From the sequence record LR756511.1: DNA of 64,000 bases; one strand, written 5' to 3'. Made by a program: the position numbers and the translations under genes. The first letter of the stretch is position 1; every line of letters starts with the position of its first letter. Positions 20,747 to 63,614 of this stretch are shown piece after piece. The notes beneath the pieces are model-generated. The model made no database searches, was not told where the DNA came from, and saw only the letters and a list, made by a program, of their open reading frames with translations.

Positions 20747-21112
20747 CTAGTCTACAAGGAGTTTGAGTCGAATTTTGGCTAATTCTTTTTCGTTATCGGT
20801 CAGTTTTCGCCATGTTCCGAAAAGGAAGTTTTGCCTTCGGTGTTCTCTTTTGATACGCTTAATGAGTCGAATGGCTCTTGCGGCCAGCCGTCTTTCTTTA
20901 GCGTAGCAGAAGTTGGCGATAACGACGTAGAAATTCCAATCTCTGTTCATGGTTGGGCGCAAGGCCAGGGGAGTATCGTCTTTGGGGATCATTTCTCCCT
21001 TTAGGCAATTTGGGAGTTGGTGGCCGCGTTCCATGAGGTAGTCATGGAGGGCCATCCAAGCTCCGCTATCTCCCTGATAAGCTGCCCGCACCATGTTAAG
21101 GATTTGGTCCAT
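20747..21112 (-). CDS. Protein with TIGR02996-like N-terminal motif
   Basis: GDSGAWMALHDYLMERG; motif 21124. Confidence 0.55.
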   Translation of the reverse strand: MDQILNMVRAAYQGDSGAWMALHDYLMERGHQLPNCLKGEMIPKDDTPLALRPTMNRDWNFYVVIANFCYAKERRLAARAIRLIKRIKREHRRQNFLFGTWRKLTDNEKELAKIRLKLLVD

Positions 21113-21137
21113 GTCCTCTGTTTGTACAGCTGCATTT

Positions 21138-21422
21138 TCATGCGGGGATTGGGATTACGATTTGGACACATTCAAGAGCATGGTCATCGACTTTGAATGG
21201 TGGGGTTAGTCCCTTTGCCCAGCAATTAGCCACCATTGGTTCTGGCAATTCAATATCCAATTCGGGCAGAGCGTCATCCTCAATATCCGAATACCAGATA
21301 TTAACGATTTTCCCATTCGGGAGTGTAATTTCAACAACATCGCCATCTTGCTCTAGCGTTACAGACTTTTTCATGGCTTTTTCCTTTTTAGCAGAAGGTT
21401 GCGGCTTTTTCAAAATCTTCAT
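21138..21422 (-). CDS. Hypothetical protein
   Basis: Tiled ORF. Confidence 0.6.
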   Translation of the reverse strand: MKILKKPQPSAKKEKAMKKSVTLEQDGDVVEITLPNGKIVNIWYSDIEDDALPELDIELPEPMVANCWAKGLTPPFKVDDHALECVQIVIPIPA

Positions 21423-21834
21423 TAGCGATACATTCTAGCTTATCGCCGTGGAGCTTAATAAGCTGTTCTTTTACTTTAGGTTCATATGGATGTTTGATAA
21501 CATGCCATGCGCCGACTTTATCTCCAGTAAGGCGGAACCACGTTGTATTTTTGGTTCTTCGCTTGAGGGTATTGACGACTTCGACCAATGCGGTGAGTTT
21601 GCTGATAATTTGGTCAAGTTTTTCGAATTCGAATTCCGTGGGTTGGGTTTTGGCCCAATTTTCGATAGATTGTCCGATAGTGCGGTCTGTCCAATAATAA
21701 TCATTACAGCCGCCGTTGCCGCGATTGCTGGCCTGTCCTACCTTCTTCCCATCCAGGTAGATATCGCAAGTAAAGCAATCAGTCTCTTCGGAGAGTTTAG
21801 CGACTCGTTTATAGCTCTTAATGGTCAGGTTCAT
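21388..21834 (-). CDS. Conserved phage hypothetical protein
   Basis: SEET-x-CF...NRGNGG pattern. Confidence 0.75.
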   Translation of the reverse strand: MNLTIKSYKRVAKLSEETDCFTCDIYLDGKKVGQASNRGNGGCNDYYWTDRTIGQSIENWAKTQPTEFEFEKLDQIISKLTALVEVVNTLKRRTKNTTWFRLTGDKVGAWHVIKHPYEPKVKEQLIKLHGDKLECIANEDFEKAATFC

Positions 21835-21838
21835 GATT

Positions 21839-22159
21839 TCACCAGCTTATTGTGATAGAGGCGAAAGGAGTTCGTACACGTTCTGCTTTATAGTCTACAT
21901 ACATTGCCGCTTTATAATCCCGCTTCAATTCTTTGGCCAGTTTTTCAGGGATTGGTCTACTGGTAGAAAATTCAGTAATATAATCTTCTTCGGAGTAGAG
22001 TTTGGTGATATTTTCGATTAGTGGGAGGAAGGCGAACCAGTCTTCGGGTGAAATATACTTAAATTCGCCTTGCTCATATTCATTGGTGAGTTGTTCGATA
22101 GTGCATCCGCCTTGGAGAGTTCTTTGAACAGCTTCGCCAAGTAATTGCATTGCGGTCAT
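21839..22159 (-). CDS. Hypothetical protein
   Basis: Tiled ORF. Confidence 0.65.
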   Translation of the reverse strand: MTAMQLLGEAVQRTLQGGCTIEQLTNEYEQGEFKYISPEDWFAFLPLIENITKLYSEEDYITEFSTSRPIPEKLAKELKRDYKAAMYVDYKAERVRTPFASITISW

Positions 22160-22170
22160 TATTTGTTCCT

Positions 22171-22485
22171 TTAGATGCCAGGGGTAATTGGGTTTTTTTG
22201 CAGGTCAAAATAGCCTACGCCGAGATTGATTATATCACCAATTTCGGGGGTTTCGGGGAAAATACCGATAAATTGGTCGCCAGCGTGTCCAGACTGGCGG
22301 GTTTCGATAATTTGTGCCCAAAGCTTAACCTTTTTGCCTAGAAAAGTTTGCGCTGTAAGTAGGTCAAAATGGGGGTTAACGGTGGCGGTGCCGTGGAAAT
22401 TTACGTCTGAGAGATAGAAGTAGCCGTAACGTTGGGATTGTCGTTCGGGGGAATCCCACATGAAGATACCAGAGCCTAGCCGCAT
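22171..22485 (-). CDS. Hypothetical protein
   Basis: Tiled ORF. Confidence 0.6.
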   Translation of the reverse strand: MRLGSGIFMWDSPERQSQRYGYFYLSDVNFHGTATVNPHFDLLTAQTFLGKKVKLWAQIIETRQSGHAGDQFIGIFPETPEIGDIINLGVGYFDLQKNPITPGI

Positions 22486-22666
22486 GGTTTCTCCTTAGCT
22501 GAGTTTGGCGGTGTTTTCGTCGGCAATTTCTTCGATAGAGCAAGCGAAGAGTTGGTGAGCGATTTTGTCTACGATACGGTCTAGTTCGTCGTGTTGTTCT
22601 TTGGTGCAAGTATCATCAATGTTCATGTAAAGATGATACAATTCGTCTTTGGTAACGTGTTCCATG

Positions 22667-22879
22667 TTATTCTCCGTTAATTTTCATCCACTGGCGAGTG
22701 AATTCGTTAAGAGCGTCTTCCATTTCTTCGGTTTTATTACGGACGAAATCAATGAGTTCGTTATCGGGAAGGCTATTGGTATAGGATGCAAGGTCGCAAC
22801 CCAGGAGCCGTTCTGCCTGATTATGTCCGTGAACAGCGAATTCAGCGATTAATTCCCGCATTTTTTGTGGTGTCATCAT
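22667..22879 (-). CDS. Hypothetical protein
   Basis: Tiled ORF with RBS. Confidence 0.6.
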   Translation of the reverse strand: MMTPQKMRELIAEFAVHGHNQAERLLGCDLASYTNSLPDNELIDFVRNKTEEMEDALNEFTRQWMKINGE

Positions 22880-22983
22880 AGTTTCGCCTTGCCAATCGTT
22901 TTTGAAAGCGTTTAGCGGACTGTTTAATACGTCGGGTGCCCCGTTTGCCGTTGGTTTTCCAGCCTAAGAGGACGCCAGGGGTT

Positions 22984-23253
22984 TTAGCGGACAGACTCAT
23001 TTACCTTTCGTCTCTCCATAATAGTTTGTACAGCTTGACGGGTGACATCGAGTTTAGTGACTAGGGAAGCGTAGACTTCGCGTGCATCGCGGCGAAGGAA
23101 ATCGCCCCAGCGATATTCGCGTTTCATATCTCCTTCTGGCCCATCAATTACTTGCTTCCGTGCCTCATCTAAAACAGATGGAGGCATAAAGAACAGCAAT
23201 TCATGGATCAGACGCATTTCAGAGGGAGTGAGTTCTAATTTATATGTTTCCAT
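22984..23253 (-). CDS. Hypothetical protein
   Basis: GAGGA RBS. Confidence 0.65.
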   Translation of the reverse strand: METYKLELTPSEMRLIHELLFFMPPSVLDEARKQVIDGPEGDMKREYRWGDFLRRDAREVYASLVTKLDVTRQAVQTIMERRKVNESVR

Positions 23254-23403
23254 TTATTCCTCAACATCTTCGAAGGATTCGGCTTTAACGTTAGCCATTA
23301 ATTCCGCTTGTTCTAGGGCATTGCAGACAATTTCTTCTGCATCCTCAAGCGTAATGTCATCGCTGAAAACGACGCGGACGGTGAGGACGATTTGGCGTTG
23401 CAT

Positions 23404-23763
23404 TTAAGCGGCCTTTCGGAGTTTGCGGATTGCGGTTTTCCAGGCTTCGTCATACTGTTTGTACAGCTGCTGGACGAGGCTATAATCCTTCTTATTGAGT
23501 CGTCCCGTTTGCTTATCCGTCATAGAGAAACCGTAGCGGGCGCCAGCATCGAGAGCGACATTCATGGGGACATTATAATGGAATTCTGGCTTGATGATAA
23601 TGGCCTTTATGCCTTCGGGGAACGTCCCGTAAAGCTGGCCCAAGATACAATTCTTGCCATTCCTTAGACTAAGCGTGGTAAGTTTGACTTTATTGTACCA
23701 GCCAGGGTTGCGGCGGTTGAGCAGTTTAACGCCAGCGTTGACTTTACGGGTGATGGTGTCCAT
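23404..23763 (-). CDS. Conserved phage protein, paralog of 32992-33351
   Basis: V-x-x-GVK-x-L...PGW...L...C-x-x-GQLYG shared. Confidence 0.8.
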   Translation of the reverse strand: MDTITRKVNAGVKLLNRRNPGWYNKVKLTTLSLRNGKNCILGQLYGTFPEGIKAIIIKPEFHYNVPMNVALDAGARYGFSMTDKQTGRLNKKDYSLVQQLYKQYDEAWKTAIRKLRKAA

Positions 23764-23809
23764 GTTTTAGCTCCTGTGTTTTGGTGTCGTTGGTTCTGAT
23801 TGTACAGCT

Positions 23810-24271
23810 TTATCGGCTTTTATCCCAGCATTTAGGGTTATTGCGTGTTTGGTGGTGTTTGGCGAATTGTTCCATAATCATAGGAATATGGGCTTGTGGG
23901 AAAGTGACCGCCATTTTAACTTGAACATTTGGTTCGGCGCGGTAGCCGTCGTCACTGAGTCCTGTATGATCTTCGACAAATGGGTAGTAATCCCAGCAAT
24001 CATCAGTTTTAATTGGAGGACAGAATATGAAGGTATGAAACTGGCAATCTCTTGGGGTTGCGTCTAGTCGAGCGATGCAAATATTCATGAATTTGGTAAA
24101 ATCTTGCATACTTGGAAAGGATATGAATACTTTTCCAGGTGTATGTTCTTGGCAAGATTCTTCGGTTTCGATGAAGGATTCCCACATAGCCTTGATTAGA
24201 GGGGCAATGAGGGTATCGACTTCAGCGCGTGTCTTGCCGACTTTAATCAGTTTAGGCTTATGTTCTTTCAT
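23810..24271 (-). CDS. Hypothetical protein
   Basis: Tiled ORF. Confidence 0.7.
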   Translation of the reverse strand: MKEHKPKLIKVGKTRAEVDTLIAPLIKAMWESFIETEESCQEHTPGKVFISFPSMQDFTKFMNICIARLDATPRDCQFHTFIFCPPIKTDDCWDYYPFVEDHTGLSDDGYRAEPNVQVKMAVTFPQAHIPMIMEQFAKHHQTRNNPKCWDKSR

Positions 24272-24450
24272 GGTTTGCCTTTAAGGATTTTGAGGCGGAA
24301 TTTAGCCTTATCGTATTTGATTTTATATTTTTCGTATTCTTCGGGGTCACGTTCCTTGAAGTTTTTGGATGCAAGGGCGCGTTGGAGTAGGGCGATCCAT
24401 TTCTCTTCGTGGGCAATTTCTTGTGCCTTAGTCATTTTCTTCTTTTTCAT
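24268..24450 (-). CDS. Basic hypothetical protein
   Basis: Coupled to the next ORF. Confidence 0.6.
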   Translation of the reverse strand: MKKKKMTKAQEIAHEEKWIALLQRALASKNFKERDPEEYEKYKIKYDKAKFRLKILKGKP

Positions 24451-24456
24451 GATTTT

Positions 24457-24777
24457 CTAGCATCCGTCACAATACCAGTGGACTTTGCCCTTGAACCATG
24501 ATGCAACGTTTTGGATTTGGGCTACGAAAGCTGGCATATTATCAATATCGCCTACGTCAACGGGCGATTCTTGGATAATCTTGCTAACTTCCTCTTCGTT
24601 GGTTTCGTTGGGGACTTCGACACGGAAGGACAAATTACCTTCCCATACGGTTTTGGTATTGGCGTTGAGGATTTCGCCTAGAGCGTTGGCAAAATCTTCT
24701 TTGGTCCAGCCTTCGGCTTTCTTTTGTTCAACGAAAGCTTTGGCTTCTTCAAGAATTTTTTGGGTAGAGGGTTTCAT
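24457..24777 (-). CDS. Hypothetical protein
   Basis: GGAG RBS before MKPST. Confidence 0.6.
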   Translation of the reverse strand: MKPSTQKILEEAKAFVEQKKAEGWTKEDFANALGEILNANTKTVWEGNLSFRVEVPNETNEEEVSKIIQESPVDVGDIDNMPAFVAQIQNVASWFKGKVHWYCDGC

Positions 24778-25196
24778 TCCCACTCCAGGGGTTCGCCTTG
24801 TTCGTCGCAAAGGAGGACAAAAAGATCATCGTAAGCATGATCTTTGTCGGGGATATTGGTATAAATCCATTCCCAGCCGTCATCGAAGGTATCGAAGGTT
24901 TTGCCGCCAGTATTAACTTCGTTGTTAGCCCAATCATAGATTTTATACATTACTTCTCCAATTCATTGACGCGGTTTTGGAGTTCATTGACTTCTGCCTG
25001 TAAGACCTGATGGGCTTCGGCGTTTTCAGTTTCTTCGTTATTAACCTTCTGTTTCATGTTGTACAGCTGCTTATTAATCCGCTCCACTTCCCATTCCAGG
25101 TTATTAATCCTATGGGTTTGATGCATATTGGTTAAAGCAGAGGCAATAGATTGTAGTAATTGTAAAAATTCTTTCTTACGGGCTTAAAATTGATTT

Positions 25197-26006: not shown

Positions 26007-26063
26007 AGCTTTTGTTGTACAGCTTTAGGAAAGTAGATTTCGTCCATGAACTTATACCATTCC

Positions 26064-26474
26064 TTATGCGTGCGCTAACCCTTTTAGTACAGCTTTAATT
26101 ACGGGGGAGTTGTCTTCTACACTAAAGGCGCGGAGAAGGTTAATTACTTCTGGATCAAATCCGCGTTCTTCTAATAGGTCAGCGGCAACTCCGAATTCCG
26201 TCTTACCATTATGTTGTTCTACATAGCCGTAATTCTCAATTTGGTCCCAAACCAGTTTGCCGTAATGGTAGATTTGGATACCGAATCGAGCTTCTTGGCT
26301 TCGTAGGGTTGCGTTACGGGAGAAAATATGGGTTACTTCTTTGGCAAGTTGTTCCTTATCTTCGGCGGTAGCGGTAATGAGTTCAGAGCTATAATATTCC
26401 ATATCGCAACCGCGAATACGTTCGGTTGATTCAGGCTTATAGGCGATGATGGTATACATTATTCTCCTTTCCAA
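26064..26474 (-). CDS. Protein with C-terminal TIGR02996-like motif
   Basis: GVAADLLEERG. Confidence 0.55.
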   Translation of the reverse strand: MERRIMYTIIAYKPESTERIRGCDMEYYSSELITATAEDKEQLAKEVTHIFSRNATLRSQEARFGIQIYHYGKLVWDQIENYGYVEQHNGKTEFGVAADLLEERGFDPEVINLLRAFSVEDNSPVIKAVLKGLAHA

Positions 26475-26800
26475 CTGCTCATGAGACGGCGCCAGCCTTC
26501 TTCAAGCGATTCAATTAGGTCACAGACCTGTACTTTGAATAGCTTTGACGGGACAAGGCAACACTGGCAATTGGCATCAAAGGGTCTAATGCCCTGTTCA
26601 GTAAACATGATAGGAGTATCCCATGCCCAGCCATAATATGCCATTTGCCAAGGGTATAGGGACGGATGCTTTTTGTTATCATATGCCCAGCGGAGGCAAT
26701 TAGCGTTCTTTTGTTCTCCGCGTTCTTCGAACCAGTCTGCCGCGATAAGGACAGCGGAATAATCTTCAACGGTTGCCCGTAGAATATTATCGACGGCCAT
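26459..26800 (-). CDS. TIGR02996-like domain protein
   Basis: ILRATVEDYSAVLIAADWFEERGEQKNANCLR. Confidence 0.65.
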   Translation of the reverse strand: MAVDNILRATVEDYSAVLIAADWFEERGEQKNANCLRWAYDNKKHPSLYPWQMAYYGWAWDTPIMFTEQGIRPFDANCQCCLVPSKLFKVQVCDLIESLEEGWRRLMSSWKGE

Positions 26801-26801
26801 A

Positions 26802-27777: not shown

Positions 27778-27827
27778 TGGTTACTCCTTATTTTGGTTTT
27801 CTCAATAGTGCTGTTTGTACAGCTGTA

Positions 27828-27971: not shown

Positions 27972-27981
27972 GGTTTGCTCC

Positions 27982-35265: not shown

Positions 35266-35607
35266 TTATTCCGCTTCAAATGGTTTGTATTGTTCAGCGC
35301 GAAGTCTTAATTGTTCCGCAGCAACCCTAAATCCTCTTTCCTCAAGGAAGTCAGCCGCTACCAGCATTTCGTCAATTTGGCTTTTCGTTAATTCGGTCAT
35401 TTCGACCACTTCAACGACAGGAATCATTTCAAATTTAGTTGCTTCATTGTCACAGCCACTTTGGGAGTGCTTAGACCAAAACCTATGCGCATCTTGCCAG
35501 CATTTTCCCCAAGCACTCCCGCCCGTTTCGGTGTAGCAAAGATAATCAGCTACGCCCCATATCGTTCTTCTTAGAACATACTTTCTTACTACCATGTGAT
35601 TTGGCAT
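35266..35607 (-). CDS. Protein with C-terminal TIGR02996-like motif
   Basis: IDEMLVAADFLEERGFRVAAEQLR. Confidence 0.6.
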   Translation of the reverse strand: MPNHMVVRKYVLRRTIWGVADYLCYTETGGSAWGKCWQDAHRFWSKHSQSGCDNEATKFEMIPVVEVVEMTELTKSQIDEMLVAADFLEERGFRVAAEQLRLRAEQYKPFEAE

Positions 35608-50882: not shown

Positions 50883-52235
50883 TTATAACCCATTACCTTG
50901 TGCCGCTCCCGCCTGTGGTCGCTGCGGAGGCTGACCTTGTGGAGCATAATTATTAAATAGAACCTTTTTACCCTGCCATGTCATAACCGCTGTTATACAA
51001 GAGCCAGTTGGATGTTCCGCTTGAGTAGAAATTAACCTCGTAGCAGTCCAATCAGATGTAAAAACGGTTGCATTTAAATTAACATTTGTATATTCGATAG
51101 CTGTAACTTTAAACAACTCGTTGTCTATCTTGCAATAAAATGGTGGAGCAGGCCACTGTAAGCCTAATTTGCCTCCACATTTATCGACAATTGGTTGGTC
51201 CACAATTGTATTATAAACTGTAAACGTAATTTCGTCGTCAACATTACCGTTTGGAATATCAGAGCTAGTATATGTTGTCAAGCACTGAATAATTGTATAA
51301 GGGTCAGGAGTAGTCGTCAAATCCCCCGAATTTGCAAACAAAAACCAAGATATACAGTTATTGCTAGTTCTTAAATAGGTTTGATTGCCATTGCTCGGTA
51401 ATAGCTTTATACCTTTTACGTCTTTCCAAGAAATAGTTGTTCCGTATTTAGGCCAAGCATTATTAGGTGGACGCCAAGGAATATTATTGATGGTTACATT
51501 TGTGCCGCCTAAAGAGGGGTGAACGTCGCCTGTAACCCATGTGCAATGACCATTAGAGTTATAGAAGCCTACAGGTGTACCAGCATTATAAAAAGTGGTA
51601 AAATTAAACCCAAATTGGTTTGCACCACCCCAAATGCCAGGATTATTGTCAATCAACACGGCTCCCGAATACAAATTTACCTGCCTTACTTTCGCCTTCG
51701 CGGGAGCATTATTGTTTGCATACTCATAAGCAACAAACAATGCCGCTCCTTGACTGCTTTGGCATCCAGGCAAACGGCACCCATCAAATCCAATTGGTTG
51801 ACCAAGATCAACAGGAATACCATTGATTGCGTAAGTTCCATTACCATTAACAATGTTGTCCCCCGCTGGGCCTACATCAAATGCATATACTCTATTTCTT
51901 AAATAGGTTGTGTTTTCTGGTCCTAAGTTCTGCCAGCAAGTTGAATTACATAATCCAAATGGTGTATCAGTAAGAGGAGTCGAAGGCGTGTTTTTACCAA
52001 ACCCAATAATAGGATCAGGCTGATTATTAGATTGATAAGTGTTTACCAATAACCATGCATTTGATACAGTTGCTCCACGCGGAATACTTCTAAGATAGAA
52101 GGTTCCTGTTCCTGTGTTCCTAGTGCCAGCTACAACAACCACATAATCGCCGTAAGTAGGCTCTTGCTCTAATAAAATACCCAAATTCTGCACATAAACC
52201 GCAGATGGATTGGGTGCTGTTGGACATAGTGCCAT
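50883..52235 (-). CDS. Putative virion structural / tail-associated protein
   Basis: N/G/T-rich 450 aa; C-terminal F-x-x-KIDNE...V-x-A...TR module like the N-termini of neighbours. Confidence 0.6.
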   Translation of the reverse strand: MALCPTAPNPSAVYVQNLGILLEQEPTYGDYVVVVAGTRNTGTGTFYLRSIPRGATVSNAWLLVNTYQSNNQPDPIIGFGKNTPSTPLTDTPFGLCNSTCWQNLGPENTTYLRNRVYAFDVGPAGDNIVNGNGTYAINGIPVDLGQPIGFDGCRLPGCQSSQGAALFVAYEYANNNAPAKAKVRQVNLYSGAVLIDNNPGIWGGANQFGFNFTTFYNAGTPVGFYNSNGHCTWVTGDVHPSLGGTNVTINNIPWRPPNNAWPKYGTTISWKDVKGIKLLPSNGNQTYLRTSNNCISWFLFANSGDLTTTPDPYTIIQCLTTYTSSDIPNGNVDDEITFTVYNTIVDQPIVDKCGGKLGLQWPAPPFYCKIDNELFKVTAIEYTNVNLNATVFTSDWTATRLISTQAEHPTGSCITAVMTWQGKKVLFNNYAPQGQPPQRPQAGAAQGNGL

Positions 52236-52267
52236 AATAAACCTATATTAGTATAAAATTACAAAAT

Positions 52268-53275
52268 CTACGACAAATTAAGCACAACCATAGCGGCACT
52301 ACCATTAGCATCATTGCTTGACAAACAATAACCAAATTGATCTGGCGCCGTTGTAAAATAGTCTGTTATTGTAGTCGTTAGCACTGTCGTAAAGTTTACA
52401 TTATTATTAGAATACTTGAATGTTAAATTGCTGTCGTCATTACCAATCTGGAACCAAATGAGCGGACCCTTCAACACTGATGCTGAAATGCCTACATATG
52501 TGCCAGCAGGCGTCGTAGGATTGGCATATTTGTCCACCGAAACTACCATATCCGTATTAGTAAGACTCGTAGCGGTGTCAAATAACAGCCTCAGAAAAAC
52601 AACCTTGCCAGTAGCACTCTCTCTCAAAACTAATCCAACACACGTTTGATTAGCAGGGTAAAGAGTTGCTAAGAATCCAGCCGTAAATGTATATGGAGTA
52701 GCAGGCGTGGTCTTCAAATACATCATCAAATTAGCTGGATTAACACCAACGCCAGGACTTCCAAATGCTAAACCGCCATCGGTAGTCACCACGGTAGCCG
52801 ATCCCTGATTGACCCAGCTAAAACCAGTCGTAGTAGGCTCAGTAAGAGTAAATAGTGGTCCCCATGTCTGCCAGCCGCCAAAATCAGTGCTAGCATCTCT
52901 ATTCAAATAAAAGCTGGTATCATTAAACCAAAGCCTTCCAGGGAAATCAGTAGTAGCAGCAGGGCGAGCGGAAAAGTTCCCCTCTTGACAATAACACCAC
53001 GTTGTATTATTCAAACCTTCTAAGGTAAAAACGTTAGCAATGTCAAGACCCGCCGCATGAAATACAGCCGTAGTGCTTTCTTCCGCTCTCGTTACCGTGA
53101 AAGTATTTCCCGTAACGCCCGTTACCAACATAATCTCATCTTCGACCCTCACTCGAAAAGGAGTTTGAGTCGGGAAACTAGTAACATCTAAAACCAAAAT
53201 AGTTGTATCAGATATTTGACAATCATTAACTATTGTGGACTTACTATTATTACCGAAATATTCGCAGAATGCCAT
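52268..53275 (-). CDS. Putative tail fibre / receptor-binding protein, paralog 2
   Basis: DTTI-x-V...FP...F-x-V-x-V-x-DEIMLVT...TVTRAEE-x-T N-module plus lectin-like C-domain. Confidence 0.7.
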   Translation of the reverse strand: MAFCEYFGNNSKSTIVNDCQISDTTILVLDVTSFPTQTPFRVRVEDEIMLVTGVTGNTFTVTRAEESTTAVFHAAGLDIANVFTLEGLNNTTWCYCQEGNFSARPAATTDFPGRLWFNDTSFYLNRDASTDFGGWQTWGPLFTLTEPTTTGFSWVNQGSATVVTTDGGLAFGSPGVGVNPANLMMYLKTTPATPYTFTAGFLATLYPANQTCVGLVLRESATGKVVFLRLLFDTATSLTNTDMVVSVDKYANPTTPAGTYVGISASVLKGPLIWFQIGNDDSNLTFKYSNNNVNFTTVLTTTITDYFTTAPDQFGYCLSSNDANGSAAMVVLNLS

Positions 53276-53277
53276 AC

Positions 53278-54342
53278 TTATGCCTTATACCAAGAATATA
53301 TGTTCATGCCAGAACCGCCCGTTGTATTATTTGTACCAAATGCAAACCCAATTGTATCTGGCCCACTTGTCAAGAAGTCTGTCCTTGACCGCGAATCAAA
53401 TAATACGAACGAATAGCCATCATTAGAAAAATACCACTTTAAATTAGTACCATCATCCTCAATAACGAAAAAGATCACCGATCCCATCAATGTAGCCGCA
53501 CTCAGCTTCGTATAATTAGAATTGAAGGTGTTTGGATCATCATACTTGTCTAATGATATGACAAGATTGCCGTTAGAAACAACGTTAGTGGTATCATATT
53601 CAATTTTAAAATAGATAAACTTATCTGTCGCACTATCTCTAAACACTACGCCGCAAGAAGTCTGATCTGCGGGATATAAAGTAGGCGTAAATGCTATTAC
53701 AACAGAATAAGGTGGGGAGGTAGGTGCCTCTTCGTTTACAGGCGTGACAAATAACTTTAAATTAGTGCCAGCGCCAACATTAGCCCCTACGCCCAAACAA
53801 AGCGAACCATTTTCAGAATTACCGCCAGCGATAGGATTTACAGTATCGTCCTCATTTACCCATTGCCAAATAGGATCAAATGTCGTTTGATTTATTGCGT
53901 CGAAATTTCGATAATCATTAAAGGTGAATGTCGGTCCCCAAGCATTCCATGAGACTCCATCTTCACGATAGACAAACCAGCCTGGACCTTGGGTTAAATA
54001 AATACGACCATTCATGCCAGGAGCGGGTAGATTTGCTCTGGTATCGCTAGAAAAGCGGCAGGAACTCCAGGCGTTAAAACTGCCTTGAGTAAAGACATTA
54101 GCAACAAGTGAGCCTGTCGTATGGGCAACAGCCGTGGTATCTTCTTCGGCTCGCGTGACAGTCCACGTTGTTGTCATTTCTCCCGCCGTTACGAGCATGA
54201 TTTCATCATCAATCATGATACGAAACGGAGAAGCAGGGAATCCTGTATTAGAAGCGACTTGAATTGTAGTGTCGCTAATAGTAACATTAGCCGCCAACGT
54301 CGTTGTCGGATAATTCGCAAAATTTTCGCATACAATAGCCAT
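53278..54342 (-). CDS. Putative tail fibre / receptor-binding protein, paralog 1
   Basis: Same two-domain architecture as 52268-53275. Confidence 0.7.
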   Translation of the reverse strand: MAIVCENFANYPTTTLAANVTISDTTIQVASNTGFPASPFRIMIDDEIMLVTAGEMTTTWTVTRAEEDTTAVAHTTGSLVANVFTQGSFNAWSSCRFSSDTRANLPAPGMNGRIYLTQGPGWFVYREDGVSWNAWGPTFTFNDYRNFDAINQTTFDPIWQWVNEDDTVNPIAGGNSENGSLCLGVGANVGAGTNLKLFVTPVNEEAPTSPPYSVVIAFTPTLYPADQTSCGVVFRDSATDKFIYFKIEYDTTNVVSNGNLVISLDKYDDPNTFNSNYTKLSAATLMGSVIFFVIEDDGTNLKWYFSNDGYSFVLFDSRSRTDFLTSGPDTIGFAFGTNNTTGGSGMNIYSWYKA

Positions 54343-56739: not shown

Positions 56740-56998
56740 TGGTTTCTCCCTTCGTTTGTTGCCTTATCTCCCAAGCGGCAATGAGCAATTTATCCCGTTC
56801 ATCGCAGAATTGTTCCGCTTCCTTAATCGAATTAAATGGAATCTGGTGAAAATCCCACCCTTCCATTACAAGGTAATATCCATTGCCATTGACGTTAGGC
56901 GGGAAGTAATAGATTTCATAGCCTCGATATTTCTTAACCAATTCGTAGCCCATTATTGCACCTTCCTCGCCCATCTTGTGTACAGCTTCGACTTCCAA
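56729..56998 (-). CDS. Hypothetical protein
   Basis: Tiled ORF. Confidence 0.55.
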   Translation of the reverse strand: MEVEAVHKMGEEGAIMGYELVKKYRGYEIYYFPPNVNGNGYYLVMEGWDFHQIPFNSIKEAEQFCDERDKLLIAAWEIRQQTKGETSEL

Positions 56999-58119
56999 GA
57001 ATCGTCCTCATCTTCAAACTCATTACAGACAATCCAAATGCTTAGTCCAACATTTACCGCAACGGTTAGGAAAAATGTCAGCATCACCGTCCACATCGGC
57101 GGCTCAACGGTCAAATAGTCAAAATCCTTAAAATGCTTACGCACGAATCCAGCCTGAACCTTCTCCCCCACCACATCTACCGACTTACCAAGATCAAACT
57201 TATCTTGTTCAATAATAAACTGCTTAACTTCCGCCTTGAGCATTTCTTGCTCAGTCCAACTAATAACATGGCACCACTTAACCTTTTCCCCATCCAGCCC
57301 AACCGCAACAATAAATTCGTTCTTATTGCCGCCTTGCCAGTGGTTTTCCTGATTAAGAGCAACGTCGAATGGAAGATCGTGATACAGAGCAAAAATCAAG
57401 CGGCATTGTTTATTATGTCCATTGCGAGCGTTCCAAAGAGTAAGCTTACGCTCCGCAACAGGGTCCGCGCCGCCAAGAATGAATTGAGAGTCATAGAATC
57501 CACGCACCAGCGGATATTCATACAACCCTTCCTTAGAATCAGGCTCAGGGAATTTGAATACACTATTGCTGGCGATAACCCTGTTCTTATAGCGATGCTG
57601 AGTAGTGCAAATCTCGCACTTATCATCGCTACCGTCCCAATTCGAAGCATACTTGTTGCCATTAATCGAATGATAATGGCGATGCATATTAATGAACTGT
57701 TTATTACCAAACTTCTGAACCAATTCAGAAAACTTACGCTCATTAACGCCAACCGTAATGCCATTGGTATCAACGACTTGCCAAACGGGAGGATGATAGT
57801 CTACGTCATACGCATGTTCGTAGCCGTCTTGGACTTCTGACGTAGTGCCATCCGAATTCTTAACGGTCTTATATTTGGGGTGACGGCATGGAACTTCTTC
57901 ATCCCATGCCTCATAGAATTCGGCGGTTTGAACGGCTCCAGTCCACCATTCTGTATCGGAAGTCTGAACAGCTTCGACAGTCCACTTGAGGATAAAGCAA
58001 AGAATCAGGGACACGCCAAAGGGAATGAGGAATTCCCACCACTTAGTTTTATGCTTGAAATAAGCATAGAGAAGGATTGCTGTAATGATAGGAATAATCA
58101 TTGAGCAGTAGATAAGCAT
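56953..58119 (-). CDS. Membrane-anchored protein (TPM-like central domain)
   Basis: N- and C-terminal TM segments; W-x-GGNKNE-x-IV. Confidence 0.75.
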   Translation of the reverse strand: MLIYCSMIIPIITAILLYAYFKHKTKWWEFLIPFGVSLILCFILKWTVEAVQTSDTEWWTGAVQTAEFYEAWDEEVPCRHPKYKTVKNSDGTTSEVQDGYEHAYDVDYHPPVWQVVDTNGITVGVNERKFSELVQKFGNKQFINMHRHYHSINGNKYASNWDGSDDKCEICTTQHRYKNRVIASNSVFKFPEPDSKEGLYEYPLVRGFYDSQFILGGADPVAERKLTLWNARNGHNKQCRLIFALYHDLPFDVALNQENHWQGGNKNEFIVAVGLDGEKVKWCHVISWTEQEMLKAEVKQFIIEQDKFDLGKSVDVVGEKVQAGFVRKHFKDFDYLTVEPPMWTVMLTFFLTVAVNVGLSIWIVCNEFEDEDDSWKSKLYTRWARKVQ

Positions 58120-58126
58120 ATATTCC

Positions 58127-59089: not shown

Positions 59090-59313
59090 TAATACCTCTC
59101 GTAAACATCCTTAATTGCTGCCGCAAACCCCTCGCAATCTTGCTTGTCTCCTTCAAGATCGAAGTCAATGGATTCGTTTTGAAGGGCGATAGTTCCATTG
59201 AGCCTAAAGGCCGCAGCGAGTTTCTTTAGATGCGGCATAGCCGCACCCAAATCTTCGTTGTAGCCTTTAAGCGTAAGTTTAGCCTTGTAAGTATGCATTA
59301 GCACTGATACCAT
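59089..59313 (-). CDS. Hypothetical protein (weak acylphosphatase-fold resemblance)
   Basis: L-x-G-x-I...EG...F pattern only. Confidence 0.45.
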   Translation of the reverse strand: MVSVLMHTYKAKLTLKGYNEDLGAAMPHLKKLAAAFRLNGTIALQNESIDFDLEGDKQDCEGFAAAIKDVYERY

Positions 59314-59564
59314 CGGTTATTGGTTGTTACCCAAATAAACCACTTCTCATCTTGAGAACCTTTGCCATGCCCACCAGGAGGCACCAGCTTAATCTGCCCA
59401 TGCTTCTTGGCGAATTCATGTAAGTCTTCAATTTCGACTTCATAATCGCCACGCATTTCACCCGTAGGCTTACCACTAAAGTAGTGAACTTCATGTTCGC
59501 CTACCTTAATAGCTTCGGGAACGGGAGGCTGTTTACCATACCAATGAGCAATGGCATATCTCAT
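59298..59564 (-). CDS. Hypothetical protein
   Basis: Tiled ORF. Confidence 0.6.
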   Translation of the reverse strand: MRYAIAHWYGKQPPVPEAIKVGEHEVHYFSGKPTGEMRGDYEVEIEDLHEFAKKHGQIKLVPPGGHGKGSQDEKWFIWVTTNNRWYQC

Positions 59565-59749
59565 AATGAATCACTGTTCGTTTTTGTTTCTTTCAAGAAA
59601 GCAGAAAGTTCTTCGTCTGTTAAAAACTCGCCCGTAGTCCAGTATGGCTTGCACGGCGCATATTCACTATAGTTTCCATTCGGGTCTATAAACTTAGGGG
59701 GAACAAACACCGTGCCACCATTCCAGTCAACATAAAAAGCTATCGACAT
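59561..59749 (-). CDS. Hypothetical protein
   Basis: Coupled ORF. Confidence 0.55.
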   Translation of the reverse strand: MSIAFYVDWNGGTVFVPPKFIDPNGNYSEYAPCKPYWTTGEFLTDEELSAFLKETKTNSDSL

Positions 59750-59754
59750 TACGG

Positions 59755-60294
59755 TTACTTCTGGAACAGGGTTTGGTCATCCTTACCAGTTTCAAACACT
59801 TCTTCCGTATTGGTAGAAGTGACGATAGTAACATCGACCTTGGCGCGGCCAGCCAGGAACCATGAAGACGGAGGCTGATCGAGCAACGTATCATGCTGCC
59901 GCTTCAAATCCCGAAGCTTCTTCTGCTCACGCAGAAACATCTTCCGCTCCGCTTCAATCGACGCCATCAAATCCTTATAAAGCGAAGTATCAAACTTCGG
60001 GTTCGCTTCCTTGACGAACTGCATAAGCAACTGCTTCCGATCTTCATATCGACCAGCAATCAGCTTCGGGTAAATCTCAGCGAAGGCGTTCTTATACTCG
60101 CTGGTAACACCCGCCTTGTCCTTGAGAATCTTCCACATGGTATCATGGGAAGCCTTATTGGTATCTTGCTGAGCCTCAATCTGGTTACGCAACTGGACTT
60201 CTGACCGTGCGCAACTCATCCAGTAGAAACCCATCAGCAAAACCACGCCAAGAAACACTCCACCAACCGCCAGAACCTTGCTAAAGTTACTCAT
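59755..60294 (-). CDS. LemA-like membrane protein
   Basis: N-terminal TM; LRNQIEAQ; P-x-FDTSLYKDLM-x-x-IEAER. Confidence 0.7.
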   Translation of the reverse strand: MSNFSKVLAVGGVFLGVVLLMGFYWMSCARSEVQLRNQIEAQQDTNKASHDTMWKILKDKAGVTSEYKNAFAEIYPKLIAGRYEDRKQLLMQFVKEANPKFDTSLYKDLMASIEAERKMFLREQKKLRDLKRQHDTLLDQPPSSWFLAGRAKVDVTIVTSTNTEEVFETGKDDQTLFQK

Positions 60295-60302
60295 AAATCC
60301 TC

Positions 60303-60569
60303 CTAGACTTGTGTGTGAAAAATACTGATATTCTTTACCTTCATAGAGTCTCCAGCCTTAGAATTGGCAATAAATTCATTGACCAATTCAAAGGCCAAAG
60401 GCTCATGAACAAACTTAGCTCGCAATTCAACTGGAAGTAAAAGCTTTGAAGTAATTGCTCCTTCCTTGTTGATAAGAATGAGGAAACGGTCAGGAACCAT
60501 CGACTTCTTAATCCGTTCGATGAGATTCATGTTCCCCTTACGTTTAGCAGTCAACATCCTAGTCACCAT
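60303..60569 (-). CDS. Hypothetical protein
   Basis: Tiled ORF. Confidence 0.55.
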   Translation of the reverse strand: MVTRMLTAKRKGNMNLIERIKKSMVPDRFLILINKEGAITSKLLLPVELRAKFVHEPLAFELVNEFIANSKAGDSMKVKNISIFHTQV

Positions 60570-60789
60570 GACCCCTTTGATCTAAATGGACAACGCCATT
60601 ACTTAATTCATTTACCTTAATCATTAAATACGCATAATCTAAATGGACAACGCCATTACTTAATTCATTTACCTTAATCATTAAATACGCATAATCGTAA
60701 TTGGTCAAAGGGACAATCTTACGACTCTCCCCTTTCCTCTTTCGTTGGTACAGCTGCCAGATTTGAGCTAGCCTTTTCTTCTTGTTCAA
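60559..60789 (-). CDS. Hypothetical protein with internal 19-aa duplication
   Basis: DYAYLMIKVNELSNGVVHL occurs twice. Confidence 0.5.
   Translation of the reverse strand: MNKKKRLAQIWQLYQRKRKGESRKIVPLTNYDYAYLMIKVNELSNGVVHLDYAYLMIKVNELSNGVVHLDQRGHGD
60580..60696. repeat. 57-bp perfect tandem duplication
   Basis: 60580-60636 equals 60637-60693. Confidence 0.95.
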
Positions 60790-60958
60790 GAATCACCATC
60801 GCTTCTTCTAGTTTTCTACGAACCGCACCAAAGTATCCAGGGCTAAAATTCCCTTGCGGCCCGCCAAGAAACCGATCTATCAGCACCGCGAGCAACGCTT
60901 GATCCGTAATCGCCATATTGGGATTTAAACCTAATATTAAGATCGCCCGCTGGAGCAT
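60719..60958 (-). CDS. Hypothetical protein (start uncertain)
   Basis: Tiled ORF. Confidence 0.45.
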   Translation of the reverse strand: MLQRAILILGLNPNMAITDQALLAVLIDRFLGGPQGNFSPGYFGAVRRKLEEAMVILEQEEKASSNLAAVPTKEERGES

Positions 60959-61033
60959 AGATTGTATATTGGTAGGGGCGGTTTAAATTATCATGTTTTT
61001 CACCGCACGCTACACTTAGAGGCGGAAGATTCT

Positions 61034-61432
61034 TTACTGTGAACATAATCTCCCCCGAATATCGCCCTCAAGTTTCGCATTCTTAATAAGCTCCAGAATA
61101 TTTAGAGCTTCAGGATAAGAGATACGTTCCTTGAGAGTAACAGGCGAACCCTGCTCCTCTACGAAATCCTTAGCCTCTCTTAATCCCAAATTTAGAACTT
61201 CGCGGGTGAGCTTAATAACCCGAATCTTCTGTTCAGGACTCCAGTGAACGACTACGGCATGGTCAAAATGCTCAACAATCTGAATTTGCGTCGGCATTTT
61301 GGTATGCAAAACGCCCTTGTTATCCATAAGGGTAACATAAAGCTGTTCTCGATCTTGATGAACAAGAACAATTTCGCCACGGTCGCCGCAATCGTTAAAC
61401 ATCGCCAATCGACCAAGCAAATTAGTAAGCAT
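61034..61432 (-). CDS. Protein with C-terminal ribosomal bL12 (L7/L12)-CTD-like domain
   Basis: QKIRVIKLTREVLNLGLREAKDFVE. Confidence 0.7.
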   Translation of the reverse strand: MLTNLLGRLAMFNDCGDRGEIVLVHQDREQLYVTLMDNKGVLHTKMPTQIQIVEHFDHAVVVHWSPEQKIRVIKLTREVLNLGLREAKDFVEEQGSPVTLKERISYPEALNILELIKNAKLEGDIRGRLCSQ

Positions 61433-61612
61433 GTTTAACTTTCTTCCTTATAAACCTCAAAGCTGTCTTTGATAATTGTTACAGATTCACCAGTTGAAGG
61501 ATCGGTTAAGTTAATATTGAACTTAATAATCCTTCCCCACTCCCGATATTCGTCGCTAATATCCAGACTCAGATTGTCCTTCAAATACTCAAATACTTCT
61601 TGCTTAGTCATG

Positions 61613-61984
61613 CTAGTCCCAAAAGTTCACCTTTTTACATTTGTTACACCGAAATAGAGGATACATTTCGTCTGGAATATGCGTGCTATGATTGTAGAGA
61701 CAGGCACCACAATCGCAGAATGCAACACCTTCATGTAACGTATTACATTCCTTGCAATAGGTGCGATGCCCGCCACCTTCGACCCAATCTTTACCAATCT
61801 CCTCCGTTGGCAGAATAGCCTTTTTGGTATCGCCTTCGAAGTTAATAATGGTAACGCATTCCCATTCCCCATTAACTTCTTTGACGGTCCCTAACTGAAC
61901 CTTGCCGTGAAAACGGTTCTCATAGCTACAAGAAAGGGTGCCATCATCTGCCGTAACCCAAGTATAAGGACTGGTAGTAGTCAT
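61613..61984 (-). CDS. Zinc-ribbon hypothetical protein
   Basis: CKEC, CDCG, C-x-KC motifs. Confidence 0.65.
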   Translation of the reverse strand: MTTTSPYTWVTADDGTLSCSYENRFHGKVQLGTVKEVNGEWECVTIINFEGDTKKAILPTEEIGKDWVEGGGHRTYCKECNTLHEGVAFCDCGACLYNHSTHIPDEMYPLFRCNKCKKVNFWD

Positions 61985-62267
61985 TCAGAAATAATCTCCC
62001 CAACGCTCAGCTTGAGCTTATATTCAGCGATATAGATGAATTCACGCCACTTGCGCGACCCATCCGTTTGTTCAGGACCACACTTCTGAAATTGAAGAAT
62101 GCCCTTATCAAACATAATTGCGGCACTATCAAACTTGGTGCCAGGGGGTGTTTGCCAACCTGAACCTTAAGGACAGGATTATAAAAAATCATGCACTCAA
62201 TGTCGCCATCCCACTCTTCCCAATCAAAAATTTGGCACTCAATGGTCTGCTTTTCGGTTGCATTCAT
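61981..62267 (-). pseudogene. Gene with apparent 1-nt deletion in the G5 run at 62144-62148
   Basis: VGKHP continues as PGTKFDSAAIMFDKGILQFQ in the shifted frame. Confidence 0.55.
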
Positions 62268-62342
62268 GGTATCTCCTTTGTTTTCTTCGTTCATTCGTTG
62301 TTTGTACAGCTGGGAATTTGTGTTCTAGGACTAGATAGAAGT

Positions 62343-62717
62343 ATGTTAAACTTCAAAGAATATTGCGAGGCTATGGCTGGCGGTAGAGCAGATGTTTATA
62401 AGATCAGACATGATCTACCCTCTAGTGTGGCTGCACCGCCACCACAAATGGGACAAAGAAGCAAGCCATTGGAAGACACTCTTGATTATTCAAAGTTAAA
62501 AGCTAGCGATATTGGCAAATATGAAAACGCTTTAACAGCAATCGCCAATTCAATTGTTGCCCCACCTTCTTTTGCTCCTAAGCCTACCAAGATGGGAGAA
62601 ATAAGGGAGTTAGAACCAGCCGACATTGCTGCAACTCACGCAAAGGCAGCAATGGCATGGCTAGGTAATTATGCTAGGTATCGCGCAACATCGCATTTGC
62701 GCTATGGTACTTATTAA
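62343..62717 (+). CDS. Candidate internal head protein with CTS-like N-terminus (MLNFKEYCEA)
   Basis: Antisense to neighbours; CTAGATA upstream. Confidence 0.55.
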   Translation: MLNFKEYCEAMAGGRADVYKIRHDLPSSVAAPPPQMGQRSKPLEDTLDYSKLKASDIGKYENALTAIANSIVAPPSFAPKPTKMGEIRELEPADIAATHAKAAMAWLGNYARYRATSHLRYGTY

Positions 62718-62901
62718 CGCTTAAACTATAGAACACGTAGGTCGAACCAGTCGTCAGCATTTGCTGTATATTTGGCGAGTGTTGGATTGTTTGGCCACCA
62801 ATGACAAAAATACCTTAATGCGTGCCGCTAAGTATGCTGGAATTGATGAAAAGGATTTGGATGCAGCAATTCGCGCATTGGGGAATAGAATTATGCATAG
62901 C

Positions 62902-63333
62902 TTAACGCTCCACCTTCTGTCTCATAATGCCATATTCTTCGTAATTTGGTTCGCCGTTTATAAGCCTAGTAGGTCCACCAAATGTAAATTCAACCTTATG
63001 TAAAGTTTTAACGCCTTGAGTATTGGTAATACGAAATGTTACATTTAACTGGACTTTCTCAAAAAGGCACCCGTCGCAATAACGATATTCCTTTTCCTTG
63101 AAATCCACTTGGTTAGGATCGTCAAAATGATTGTCAATCCATTCCATCACCTTTTCCATATACTTCTTGTCTTCCTCTTCGGACATATCATACTTCTTAT
63201 AAGTATAATCACGCCCCTTTACAGGCATCGTATCTGGCTCTTTTTCATATTTACAACCCGCAAACACCAACATAATTAAAGCTAGCTTTCTCATACATAC
63301 ACCGTCCTGTAATAATGGGAAACAGGCATACAT
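62902..63333 (-). CDS. Putative lipoprotein
   Basis: MRKLALIMLVFAGC lipobox. Confidence 0.65.
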   Translation of the reverse strand: MYACFPLLQDGVCMRKLALIMLVFAGCKYEKEPDTMPVKGRDYTYKKYDMSEEEDKKYMEKVMEWIDNHFDDPNQVDFKEKEYRYCDGCLFEKVQLNVTFRITNTQGVKTLHKVEFTFGGPTRLINGEPNYEEYGIMRQKVER

Positions 63334-63614
63334 CCCAACGCCGTCAGTAATGCCTTTATATCTTCACGATTAAAAACAACAACATCTTCCATCCACCTCC
63401 ACCGATATCCGCATCGAGCAAATCTCCTAAAAGGAATCAATTCGCTAGGCAACCTTGTACGTAAAGCTACTATCTGTTCGTATTTGGCGAACAGATAGCA
63501 GTATGGTTTACCGATTTCGCGTTGGCAAAAGCCACGTTCCTCAATATAATCGCACATAACTAGCAATTCATCTATTGGAACGGACTTTGGCTTACGTGGT
63601 TTAACCTTTATCAT
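63291..63614 (-). CDS. Protein with TIGR02996-like motif
   Basis: PIDELLVMCDYIEERG. Confidence 0.55.
   Translation of the reverse strand: MIKVKPRKPKSVPIDELLVMCDYIEERGFCQREIGKPYCYLFAKYEQIVALRTRLPSELIPFRRFARCGYRWRWMEDVVVFNREDIKALLTALGCMPVSHYYRTVYV

What the first reader, a model, noticed from the sequence alone, without database searches (positions are those of the whole stretch)
20747..63614. Five phage proteins carry a TIGR02996-like (A/C)D(W/F/Y/L)(L/F/I)(E/M)ERG helix motif
Seen: 20747 (ALHDYLMERG), 26064 (VAADLLEERG), 26459 (IAADWFEERG...ANCLR), 35266 (VAADFLEERG...AEQLR), 63291 (VMCDYIEERG), fused N- or C-terminally to unrelated domains. Established: TIGR02996 (RLVYADWL-x-E-x-GD-x-x-RAEFIR-like) is a repeat-companion domain expanded in Gemmata-type planctomycetes and myxobacteria; its function is unknown. 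Inference: a host clue, and possible mimicry or decoying of a host interaction or immunity module.
Basis: partly seen in the sequence, partly recalled or inferred. Interest (0 to 1): 0.65.

Follow-up and report, generated by a model that had tools for sequence, protein, structure and literature searches.

The report
Shared TPR-like helix module, huge phage
Several small orphan proteins of a 595-kb environmental phage share a short three-helix module that looks like a diverged copy of the uncharacterised TIGR02996 domain. That domain turns out to be common on viral contigs, so it is neither a reliable host clue nor evidence of mimicry.

Summary
The motif is real. D[WFYL][LFIM][EM]ERG occurs five times in the window, against none in 200 shuffles, each time in a tightly packed minus-strand ORF. 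The window is the first 64 kb of LR756511.1 (595,163 bp, vernal-pool mud). A sixth copy lies at 192.7 kb.

The link to TIGR02996 is partly supported.
- No copy reaches the curated cut-off of 29.05 bits. The best copy in the window scores 14.6-15.8 bits, and the sixth copy 21.7-23.2.
- A profile-profile comparison with 58 bona fide domains gives 94.8% probability.
- A profile of 94 canonical domains ranks five of the six copies as its top five hits among 6,394 phage ORFs. Three of these are significant and two marginal.
- The copy at 20747-21112 is unsupported, and its start codon is ambiguous.

Models and weak Pfam hits indicate a TPR-like three-helix unit.

The partner regions are unrelated orphans. 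The canonical domain occurs on at least 66 IMG/VR loci (36-75% GC) and in PHROG 18306. It is patchy even within Planctomycetota, though abundant in Gemmatales. No PADLOC model matches. The host therefore stays unknown, and mimicry has no support. My best guess is a portable protein-binding handle.

The parts
26459..26800 (-). ORF P0003 (113 aa), with the N-terminal TIGR02996-like three-helix module at residues ~2-46 (26663-26797). The motif AADWFEERG is at 26717-26737. This is the best-supported copy in the window.
   Evidence: TIGR02996.1 scores 14.6 bits, E 0.021, and 15.8 bits in six frames. The canonical profile gives E 3.3e-7. The AF2 model has pLDDT 85-96 over residues ~10-45, with helices 2-9, 15-26 and 30-43. 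There is one distant homologue, P0006, at E 6e-5 in 1.84 billion proteins. A GGAG lies upstream of the start.
26064..26459 (-). ORF P0002, most likely 131 aa from the ATG at 26459 (the ORF is listed from a TTG at 26474). The motif AADLLEERG at 26160-26180 is C-terminal. Translationally coupled to P0003.
   Evidence: The P0003 stop and P0002 start overlap as TAATG, with an AGGAG 7 nt upstream. The canonical profile gives E 0.09-0.02, ranking 4th of 6,394 ORFs. The leave-one-out phage profile gives E 0.016, the top non-training hit.
35266..35607 (-). ORF P0004 (113 aa), with the module at the C-terminus (~35278-35412). The motif AADFLEERG...AEQLR is at 35332-35352.
   Evidence: The canonical profile gives E 2.1e-4, and 4.8e-8 after one iteration. 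Leave-one-out gives E 6e-7. TIGR02996.1 scores 12 bits in six frames. An AGGAGG lies upstream.
63291..63614 (-). ORF P0005 (107 aa). The N-terminal motif MCDYIEERG is at 63531-63551. A marginal member.
   Evidence: Leave-one-out gives E 0.005, the top non-training hit. The canonical profile gives only E 0.7-0.3, though it ranks 5th of 6,394. BLASTP against P0004 gives 69% identity over 16 aa. The start overlaps the stop of the upstream ORF 63611-63964.
20747..21112 (-). ORF P0001 (121 aa from the ATG at 21112, or 102 aa from the ATG at 21055). The motif LHDYLMERG is at 21023-21043. This is the weakest copy and its membership is unsupported.
   Evidence: No profile finds it: leave-one-out gives E 98 and it is absent from the canonical-profile hits. 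The database gene call starts at M20, which has the better GGAG spacing.

Best explanation
The window is the first 64 kb of a complete 595-kb huge phage. Within a long, co-directional array of small orphan genes, four of the five flagged ORFs carry the same module of about 35-45 residues. A sixth gene at 192.7 kb carries it too, and the ORF at 20747 may.

The module has three helices: helix 1, then a helix with the core (A)AD-aromatic-hydrophobic-EE-R-G, then a helix ending in LR. It is a diverged, sub-threshold relative of the TIGR02996 'repeat-companion' domain, which both models and weak Pfam hits indicate is itself a TPR-like one-and-a-half-repeat unit.

Shown: the motif recurs, it is clustered, its similarity to the canonical domain is limited to the module, the fold is helical, and the partner regions are unrelated.

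Inferred: the module is a portable protein-protein interaction or capping handle that has been joined to different small payload domains, at either end. It would give several accessory proteins (probably early or host-takeover proteins) a common binding mode. That could be to one shared partner or to each other. The translationally coupled pair P0003/P0002 is the most likely case of binding to each other.

The same domain is frequent on other viral contigs. Its presence here therefore reflects a widespread mobile module rather than a signature of a particular host.
For: - Motif: 5 found against 0 in 200 shuffles.
- Clustering: 5 of 6 copies lie within 42.9 kb, p about 8e-4.
- Coding evidence: the ORFs sit in a same-strand array of tightly spaced genes, with Shine-Dalgarno motifs or start/stop overlaps.
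- Homology: hhalign gives 94.8% probability, E 5e-8, over 32 columns against verified TIGR02996 domains.
- Ranking: the canonical profile's top five hits in the whole phage are exactly five of the six copies.
- Leave-one-out recovery succeeds for four window copies.
- Fold: the AF2 model of P0003 has three confident helices. Its best structural matches are TPR units, with Z 5-5.9 and rmsd 2.1-2.4 A over 45 residues.
- Canonical protein: a viral TIGR02996 protein models at pLDDT 92, and its first 47 residues superpose on TPR units at 1.3-1.8 A.
- Pfam: canonical domains give recurrent weak TPR hits.
- Variable partners are the rule for this domain: LRR, HEAT, DUF1963, a conserved viral C-domain, and GYG repeats.
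- Spread in viruses: 66 IMG/VR loci and PHROG 18306 carry the canonical domain.
Against: - No copy passes the curated TIGR02996 cut-off.
- The nearly invariant Trp is kept only in P0003, and the upstream Arg is lost in all window copies.
- P0002 and P0005 are only marginal, and P0001 fails every profile test.
- The module is short and helical, so convergence cannot be excluded.
- The P0003 model used canonical domains as its alignment, so its TPR-like shape is not independent evidence.
- The structural Z-scores are below the noise level quoted for helical proteins.
- Nothing tested here shows binding.
- The partner regions have no recognisable fold or family.
Confidence: 0.55

Rival explanations
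1. The phage motif is a convergent or generic TPR-like amphipathic helix-turn element. It resembles the TIGR02996 core by chance of composition and is not homologous to it. The five proteins may still share the element through duplication within the phage.
For: All copies score below the curated threshold. The canonical Trp and Arg are mostly lost. Canonical domains themselves hit generic TPR models weakly. Fold searches return only generic TPR or helical matches at low Z.
Against: hhalign gives 94.8% probability. The canonical profile ranks the copies 1st to 5th of 6,394 ORFs, three of them at E <= 2e-4. In P0003, P0004 and the sixth copy the similarity extends over all three helices, including the terminal A-x-x-L-R.
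Confidence: 0.22
2. The module was captured from a host rich in TIGR02996 proteins (Gemmatales or Myxococcota). The phage uses it to mimic or decoy the host's TIGR02996 interaction network or an immunity module.
For: The family is hugely expanded in Gemmatales and in an Archangium genome, with up to 57-72 copies. Planctomycetes is the third-ranked phylum (2.2%) in the paper's taxonomic profile of this phage. One of the ESM Atlas nearest clusters is mostly Planctomycetota (weak).
Against: - The phage is 42% GC, against a median of 65% (minimum 47%) for bacterial loci with the domain.
- The paper could not assign a host.
- The canonical domain is widespread on viral contigs of 36-75% GC.
- The phage copies are far more diverged than a recent capture would be.
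- No PADLOC defence model includes the domain.
- Only 2 of 61 evenly sampled Planctomycetota have it at all.
Confidence: 0.1
3. The motif recurrence is a chance or annotation artefact, and some of the ORFs are not genes.
For: All five are orphans. Searches found no relatives for P0001, P0004 and P0005; P0002 was not searched on its own. The start of P0001 is uncertain.
Against: None was found in 200 shuffles. The ORFs fit a tightly packed same-strand gene array with ribosome-binding sites or coupled starts. P0003 has an independent environmental homologue that conserves the module.
Confidence: 0.03

Closest known systems
TIGR02996 (NCBIfam 'rpt_mate_G_obs', repeat-companion domain; function unknown)
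   Same: The length is about 45 residues and the layout is three helices. The core is A-D-(aromatic)-(L/F/I)-E-E-x-G, followed by A-x-x-(L/I)-R. It is fused to variable partner regions and occurs in several copies per genome. The profile-profile probability is 94.8%.
   Different: Scores are below the curated cut-off. Trp and the upstream Arg are mostly replaced, and Gly is followed by E/F/H rather than D. Two copies are C-terminal. The proteins are small (107-131 aa) and have no LRR or HEAT repeats.
PHROG 18306 and the IMG/VR viral proteins with an N-terminal canonical TIGR02996 domain plus a conserved C-domain of about 150 aa
   Same: They are virus-encoded, the module is N-terminal, several copies can occur per contig, and the function is unknown.
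   Different: The phage proteins do not match phrog_18306. The phage has no homologue of the conserved C-domain.
Tetratricopeptide (TPR) repeat units
   Same: Both are helix-turn-helix packing. The module superposes on TPR units of EMC2, NrfG, APC3 and others at 1.3-2.4 A over 45-47 residues. Canonical domains give weak hits to TPR_15, TPR_19, TPR_17 and TPR_16.
   Different: It is a single isolated unit rather than an array. No Pfam TPR model is matched by the phage proteins themselves. Z-scores are low.

Membership tests
TIGR02996 (NCBIfam domain model) | Score at or above the curated cut-off of 29.05 bits against TIGR02996.1 | tested here: not met
   P0003 scores 14.6 bits and 15.8 bits in six frames. 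P0004 scores 12 bits. P0001, P0002 and P0005 have no hit. The sixth copy, outside the window, scores 21.7-23.2 bits. Bona fide bacterial members score 48-81 bits.
TIGR02996 (NCBIfam domain model) | Homology of the module detectable by profile-profile or iterated profile search | tested here: met
   hhalign gives 94.8% probability, E 5.3e-8. The canonical profile gives E 3.3e-7 for P0003, 2.1e-4 for P0004 and 1.4e-8 for the sixth copy. P0002 (0.09) and P0005 (0.7) are marginal, and P0001 is not found.
TIGR02996 (NCBIfam domain model) | Conserved core R-L-V-Y-A-D-W-L-E-E-x-G-D ... R-A-E-F-I-R (nearly invariant R, A, D, W, L, E, E, G, R) | tested here: inconclusive
   D, E-R-G and mostly A and E are kept. 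W is kept only in P0003 (F, L, Y and Y elsewhere). The upstream R is lost in all window copies. The terminal L-R is kept in P0002, P0003 and P0004.
TIGR02996 (NCBIfam domain model) | N-terminal position ahead of a repeat region (LRR, HEAT) or another C-terminal domain | tested here: not met
   The module is N-terminal in P0003, P0005 and P0001, but C-terminal in P0002 and P0004. No repeats or Pfam domains occur in any partner region. Canonical members carry LRR_6, HEAT or DUF1963.
TIGR02996 (NCBIfam domain model) | Occurrence in a lineage where the family is expanded (Gemmatales, Myxococcota) | not testable with these tools
   The host is unknown. The family's distribution was verified, but the canonical domain also occurs on many viral contigs.
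TPR-like helical repeat superfamily | Helix-turn-helix unit that superposes on solved TPR repeats | tested here: inconclusive
   For P0003 residues 1-45, Z is 5-5.9 at 2.1-2.4 A. For the canonical viral protein, residues 1-47, Z is 3.2-4.5 at 1.3-1.8 A. Z is below the noise level quoted for helical folds. The P0003 model depended on a canonical alignment. No phage protein hits a Pfam TPR model.
PHROG 18306 | Match to the phrog_18306 profile | tested here: not met
   It is not among the hits at E <= 1 for P0001-P0005. By contrast, 56 of 58 canonical domains hit it.
Known anti-phage defence modules (PADLOC) | Match to any PADLOC model | tested here: not met
   No hit for the five proteins, the sixth copy or the canonical TIGR02996 module. 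Only the HEAT repeats of one bacterial protein hit.

The most novel reading that the evidence does not exclude
The six proteins form a phage 'adaptor set'. One diverged TIGR02996-type handle plugs six different small payload domains into a single hub. That hub would be either the still-unknown partner bound by the dozens of cellular TIGR02996-LRR/HEAT paralogues, or a phage-encoded one. If so, this compact phage set would be the first experimental handle on what the TIGR02996 domain binds.
Probability: 0.1. Interest if true: 0.7.

Novelty: new variant of a known kind. Interest (0 to 1): 0.33.

Why it matters
TIGR02996 has no known function. It is nevertheless present in tens of copies in Gemmatales and myxobacterial genomes and, as shown here, on many viral contigs.

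A huge phage that carries the module in a diverged form, on six tiny proteins with unrelated partner regions, offers a small and tractable set for finding what the module binds. The translationally coupled pair is the obvious place to start.

For genome scanning the practical lessons are negative. The motif should not be used to assign a host. It is not evidence of immune mimicry.

Tried and rejected
- Word-based protein search with P0003, P0001 and P0005 found only the queries themselves.
- An exhaustive search of 1.84 billion representatives with P0003 found one distant homologue, P0006, with no genomic context.
- IMG/VR scans with the phage alignment and with P0004 found nothing. P0003 found only two domain-level matches.
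- INPHARED tblastn with one canonical domain found nothing, and with P0003 only itself.
- A sequence search of the PDB with the canonical profile found nothing.
- Foldseek against PDB and BFVD gave nothing at E <= 0.001 for either model.
- The ESM Atlas gave only unnamed clusters, with recognition below the useful level.
- I considered an F-box-like reading, because the canonical layout is an N-terminal module of about 45 aa followed by LRRs. I rejected it because no F-box model appears among even the weak Pfam hits of the 58 canonical domains, whereas TPR models recur.
- The conserved C-domain of canonical viral proteins is absent from the phage.
- Promoter and terminator scans of 20-37 kb were at chance level.
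- A first phylum tally at E <= 1e-16 was too strict to be informative and was repeated at 1e-5.
- The genome-contig scan with the phage alignment failed for lack of a conserved stretch.
- Literature searches for TIGR02996 and its synonyms found no paper.
Full report
**What the window is.** Megablast places the window at bases 1-64,000 of LR756511.1, an unannotated 'uncultured phage' record of 595,163 bp. A supplementary table of Al-Shayeb et al. 2020 (PMC7162821) lists a genome of exactly this length. It is SR-VP_PHAGE_COMPLETE_CIR-CU-CL_42_23, from vernal-pool mud in Lake County, California. Its taxonomic profile there is 82% unknown, Proteobacteria 4.0%, Parcubacteria 2.3% and Planctomycetes 2.2%. 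The top-to-second ratio of 1.69 is below the paper's threshold of 3, so no host phylum was assigned. I fetched the rest of the record. It is 42.1% GC, and ARAGORN finds 63 tRNA genes.

**The observation.** A six-frame scan finds the five peptides on the minus strand. They are LHDYLMERG (21023-21043), AADLLEERG (26160-26180), AADWFEERG (26717-26737), AADFLEERG (35332-35352) and MCDYIEERG (63531-63551). The pattern D[WFYL][LFIM][EM]ERG occurs 5 times, against 0 in 200 shuffles of the window.

The ORFs are P0001-P0005, of 107-136 aa. They sit in a long same-strand array of small, tightly spaced genes that runs from about 18 kb to 64 kb.
- Four have GGAG-type ribosome-binding sites, and P0005 overlaps the stop of the gene upstream.
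- The P0003 stop and an ATG of P0002 overlap as TAATG behind an AGGAG. P0002 therefore most likely starts at 26459, giving 131 aa, and is translationally coupled to P0003.
- For P0001 the public gene call starts at M20, giving 102 aa. That ATG has the better Shine-Dalgarno spacing. If it is the true start, the motif sits at the extreme N-terminus without a preceding helix.

Pairwise comparison shows similarity only across 14-30 residues around the motif, and the rest of the proteins are unrelated. A sixth copy (TADALEESG...SFLR) lies outside the window at 192,661-193,158 on the plus strand. No further copies were found in the whole genome. Five of six copies within 42.9 kb has a simulated probability of about 8e-4.

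**Is it TIGR02996?** Against the curated NCBIfam model (cut-off 29.05 bits), no copy passes.
- P0003 scores 14.6 bits (E 0.021), and the other four window proteins score nothing.
- In six frames the sixth copy scores 23.2 bits, P0003 15.8 and P0004 12.

To test homology properly I collected canonical domains from public genomes with a degenerate ADWLEExGD DNA pattern. I confirmed that full-length examples are bona fide members, scoring 48-81 bits, with LRR_6, HEAT, DUF1963 or no recognisable C-terminal domain. I then aligned 58 diverse domains as alignment A2.
- hhalign of the five window copies against A2 gives 94.8% probability, E 5.3e-8, over 32 columns.
- A profile of 94 bacterial and viral canonical domains was searched against all 6,394 six-frame ORFs of the phage. 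Its top five hits are exactly five of the six copies: the sixth copy at 1.4e-8, P0003 at 3.3e-7, P0004 at 2.1e-4, P0002 at 0.09 and P0005 at 0.7. P0001 is not found.
- Leave-one-out profiles built from the phage copies alone recover P0004 (6e-7), P0003 (4e-4), P0005 (5e-3) and P0002 (0.016), each as the best non-training hit. They do not recover P0001 (E 98).

So three copies are significantly TIGR02996-like, two are marginal but consistently ranked, and P0001 rests on the seven-residue core alone. The divergence is visible in the alignment. The nearly invariant Trp survives only in P0003, the upstream Arg is lost in all window copies, and Gly is followed by E, F or H rather than D.

**What the module is structurally.** AlphaFold2 of P0003, with the canonical domains as its alignment, gives confident helices at residues 2-9, 15-26 (AADWFEE) and 30-43. 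pLDDT is 85-96 over residues 10-45. The C-terminal half has low confidence.

A canonical viral TIGR02996 protein (locus L160, 200 aa, 20-sequence alignment) models at pLDDT 91.9 and pTM 0.85, with the same three helices followed by an alpha/beta domain. Foldseek finds nothing significant for either model.

VIA-align returns almost only TPR units for the first 45-47 residues of both models. Examples are 4r7s, EMC2 6ww7_B, NrfG 2e2e_B and APC3 4ui9_F.
- The canonical model superposes at 1.3-1.8 A with Z 3.2-4.5.
- P0003 superposes at 2.1-2.4 A with Z 5-5.9.

These Z-scores are below the noise level the tool quotes for helical folds, and the P0003 model is not independent of the canonical alignment. 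Independently of the models, the 58 canonical domains give recurrent weak Pfam hits to TPR_15 (13 members), TPR_19 (12), TPR_17 (7) and TPR_16 (best E 9.8e-5), and to no other fold class. I therefore read TIGR02996 as a TPR-like one-and-a-half-repeat unit. The PDB holds no relative detectable by sequence.

**Distribution, host and mimicry.** The family's stated expansion is real, but patchy.

| Genomes searched | Result |
|---|---|
| Limnoglobus genome | 28 copies |
| Archangium genome | 72 copies |
| Gemmatales | 16 of 31 genomes at E <= 1e-14, up to 57 copies each |
| Planctomycetota, even sample | 2 of 61 |
| Patescibacteria | 1 of 81 |
| 14 control genomes | none |

More important for the inference, the canonical domain is common in viral sequence.
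- 56 of 58 canonical domains hit PHROG 18306.
- A scan of IMG/VR for ADWLEExG gave 66 confirmed loci with 36-75% GC.
- Several contigs carry two or three copies, and one contig is 354 kb.
- The partner regions there are also variable. Twenty share a conserved C-domain of about 150 aa. Others carry LRR, FGE-sulfatase, a DnaJ-type zinc finger or GYG/GSGW low-complexity repeats.

Bacterial loci with the domain have a median GC of 65% and a minimum of 47%, against 42% for this phage. No PADLOC model matches the phage proteins or the canonical module. The domain therefore does not point to a particular host, and nothing supports an immunity or decoy role. These ideas remain untested rather than refuted.

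**Relatives of the phage proteins.** The five proteins are effectively orphans.
- Pfam, NCBIfam and PHROGs give nothing significant outside the module.
- Word searches return only the queries.
- INPHARED returns only the phage itself.
- The exhaustive search of 1.84 billion representatives with P0003 finds one homologue. This is P0006, 105 aa, from run ERR1700727, at 39.5 bits and E 6e-5. It conserves LVAADWF..ANCLRW..NKKRP but has DDNN in place of EERG. No contig is on record for it.
- The phage lacks the conserved C-domain of the canonical viral family.

**Mechanism.** What is shown is a recurrent, clustered, helical module of TIGR02996/TPR type, attached at either end to unrelated small regions, in a block of small co-oriented genes, with one translationally coupled pair. 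From this I infer that the module is a portable protein-binding or capping handle. It would give several accessory proteins a shared binding mode, either to a common partner or to each other.

**Novelty and verdict.** This is a diverged variant of a known but uncharacterised domain, in a known huge phage. The variant features are sub-threshold sequence, C-terminal placement in two copies, very small proteins without repeats, and clustering. Interest is modest at 0.33.

Noticed in passing
window 61034-61432 (-): A 132-aa ORF carries a ribosomal protein L7/L12 C-terminal domain (PF00542, 44.2 bits against a cut-off of 25.9). Its GLREAKDFVEEQG stretch superficially resembles the motif under study but is unrelated to it.
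   Followed up: partly
window 8856-9962 (+) and 910-1977 (+): A T4-type RNA ligase 1 domain (PF09511, E 1e-11) and a DUF932 protein (E 4e-48). These are the only other Pfam-recognisable products among the ten largest ORFs scanned. The 335-450-aa ORFs at 50883-54342 and 56953-58119 have no family.
   Followed up: no
window 6309-6392 (+); record 179588-179661 and 290614-290689 (outside the window): The window holds a tRNA-Leu(TAA). ARAGORN finds 63 tRNAs in the whole phage, most of them between 233 and 291 kb. They include one with anticodon CTA (amber-reading) and one called with a four-base anticodon.
   Followed up: no
window 26457-26461 (-): The P0003 stop and P0002 start overlap as TAATG, preceded by AGGAG. 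This is classic translational coupling of two genes that both carry the module, one at its N-terminus and the other at its C-terminus.
   Followed up: partly
L223:3001-3087 and L224:3001-3075 (IMG/VR contigs, 62-64% GC): Viral proteins with an AADWFEE(F/V)G module, followed directly by long GYG or GSGW low-complexity repeats. This is another kind of 'companion repeat' for the domain.
   Followed up: no
genome handles G004 (Candidatus Peregrinibacteria, 1.1 Mb) and G086-G145: A 1.1-Mb CPR genome has three TIGR02996 matches, one with an in-frame TAG. In contrast, only 2 of 61 evenly sampled Planctomycetota genomes have any. The family is much patchier than 'planctomycetes' suggests.
   Followed up: partly
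L160:3001-3600 and 19 related IMG/VR loci (alignment A7); 37 bacterial ORFs in loci L037-L156: A conserved C-terminal domain of about 150 aa (motifs RGF, HPV, L-[ST]-D, LS-x-AC) follows the canonical TIGR02996 module. It models at pLDDT 92, and the listed structural matches cover only the first ~75 residues of the model, so this domain was barely tested by the PDB fold searches.
   Followed up: partly
window 688: A single N in the sequence. It was left as it is.
   Followed up: no
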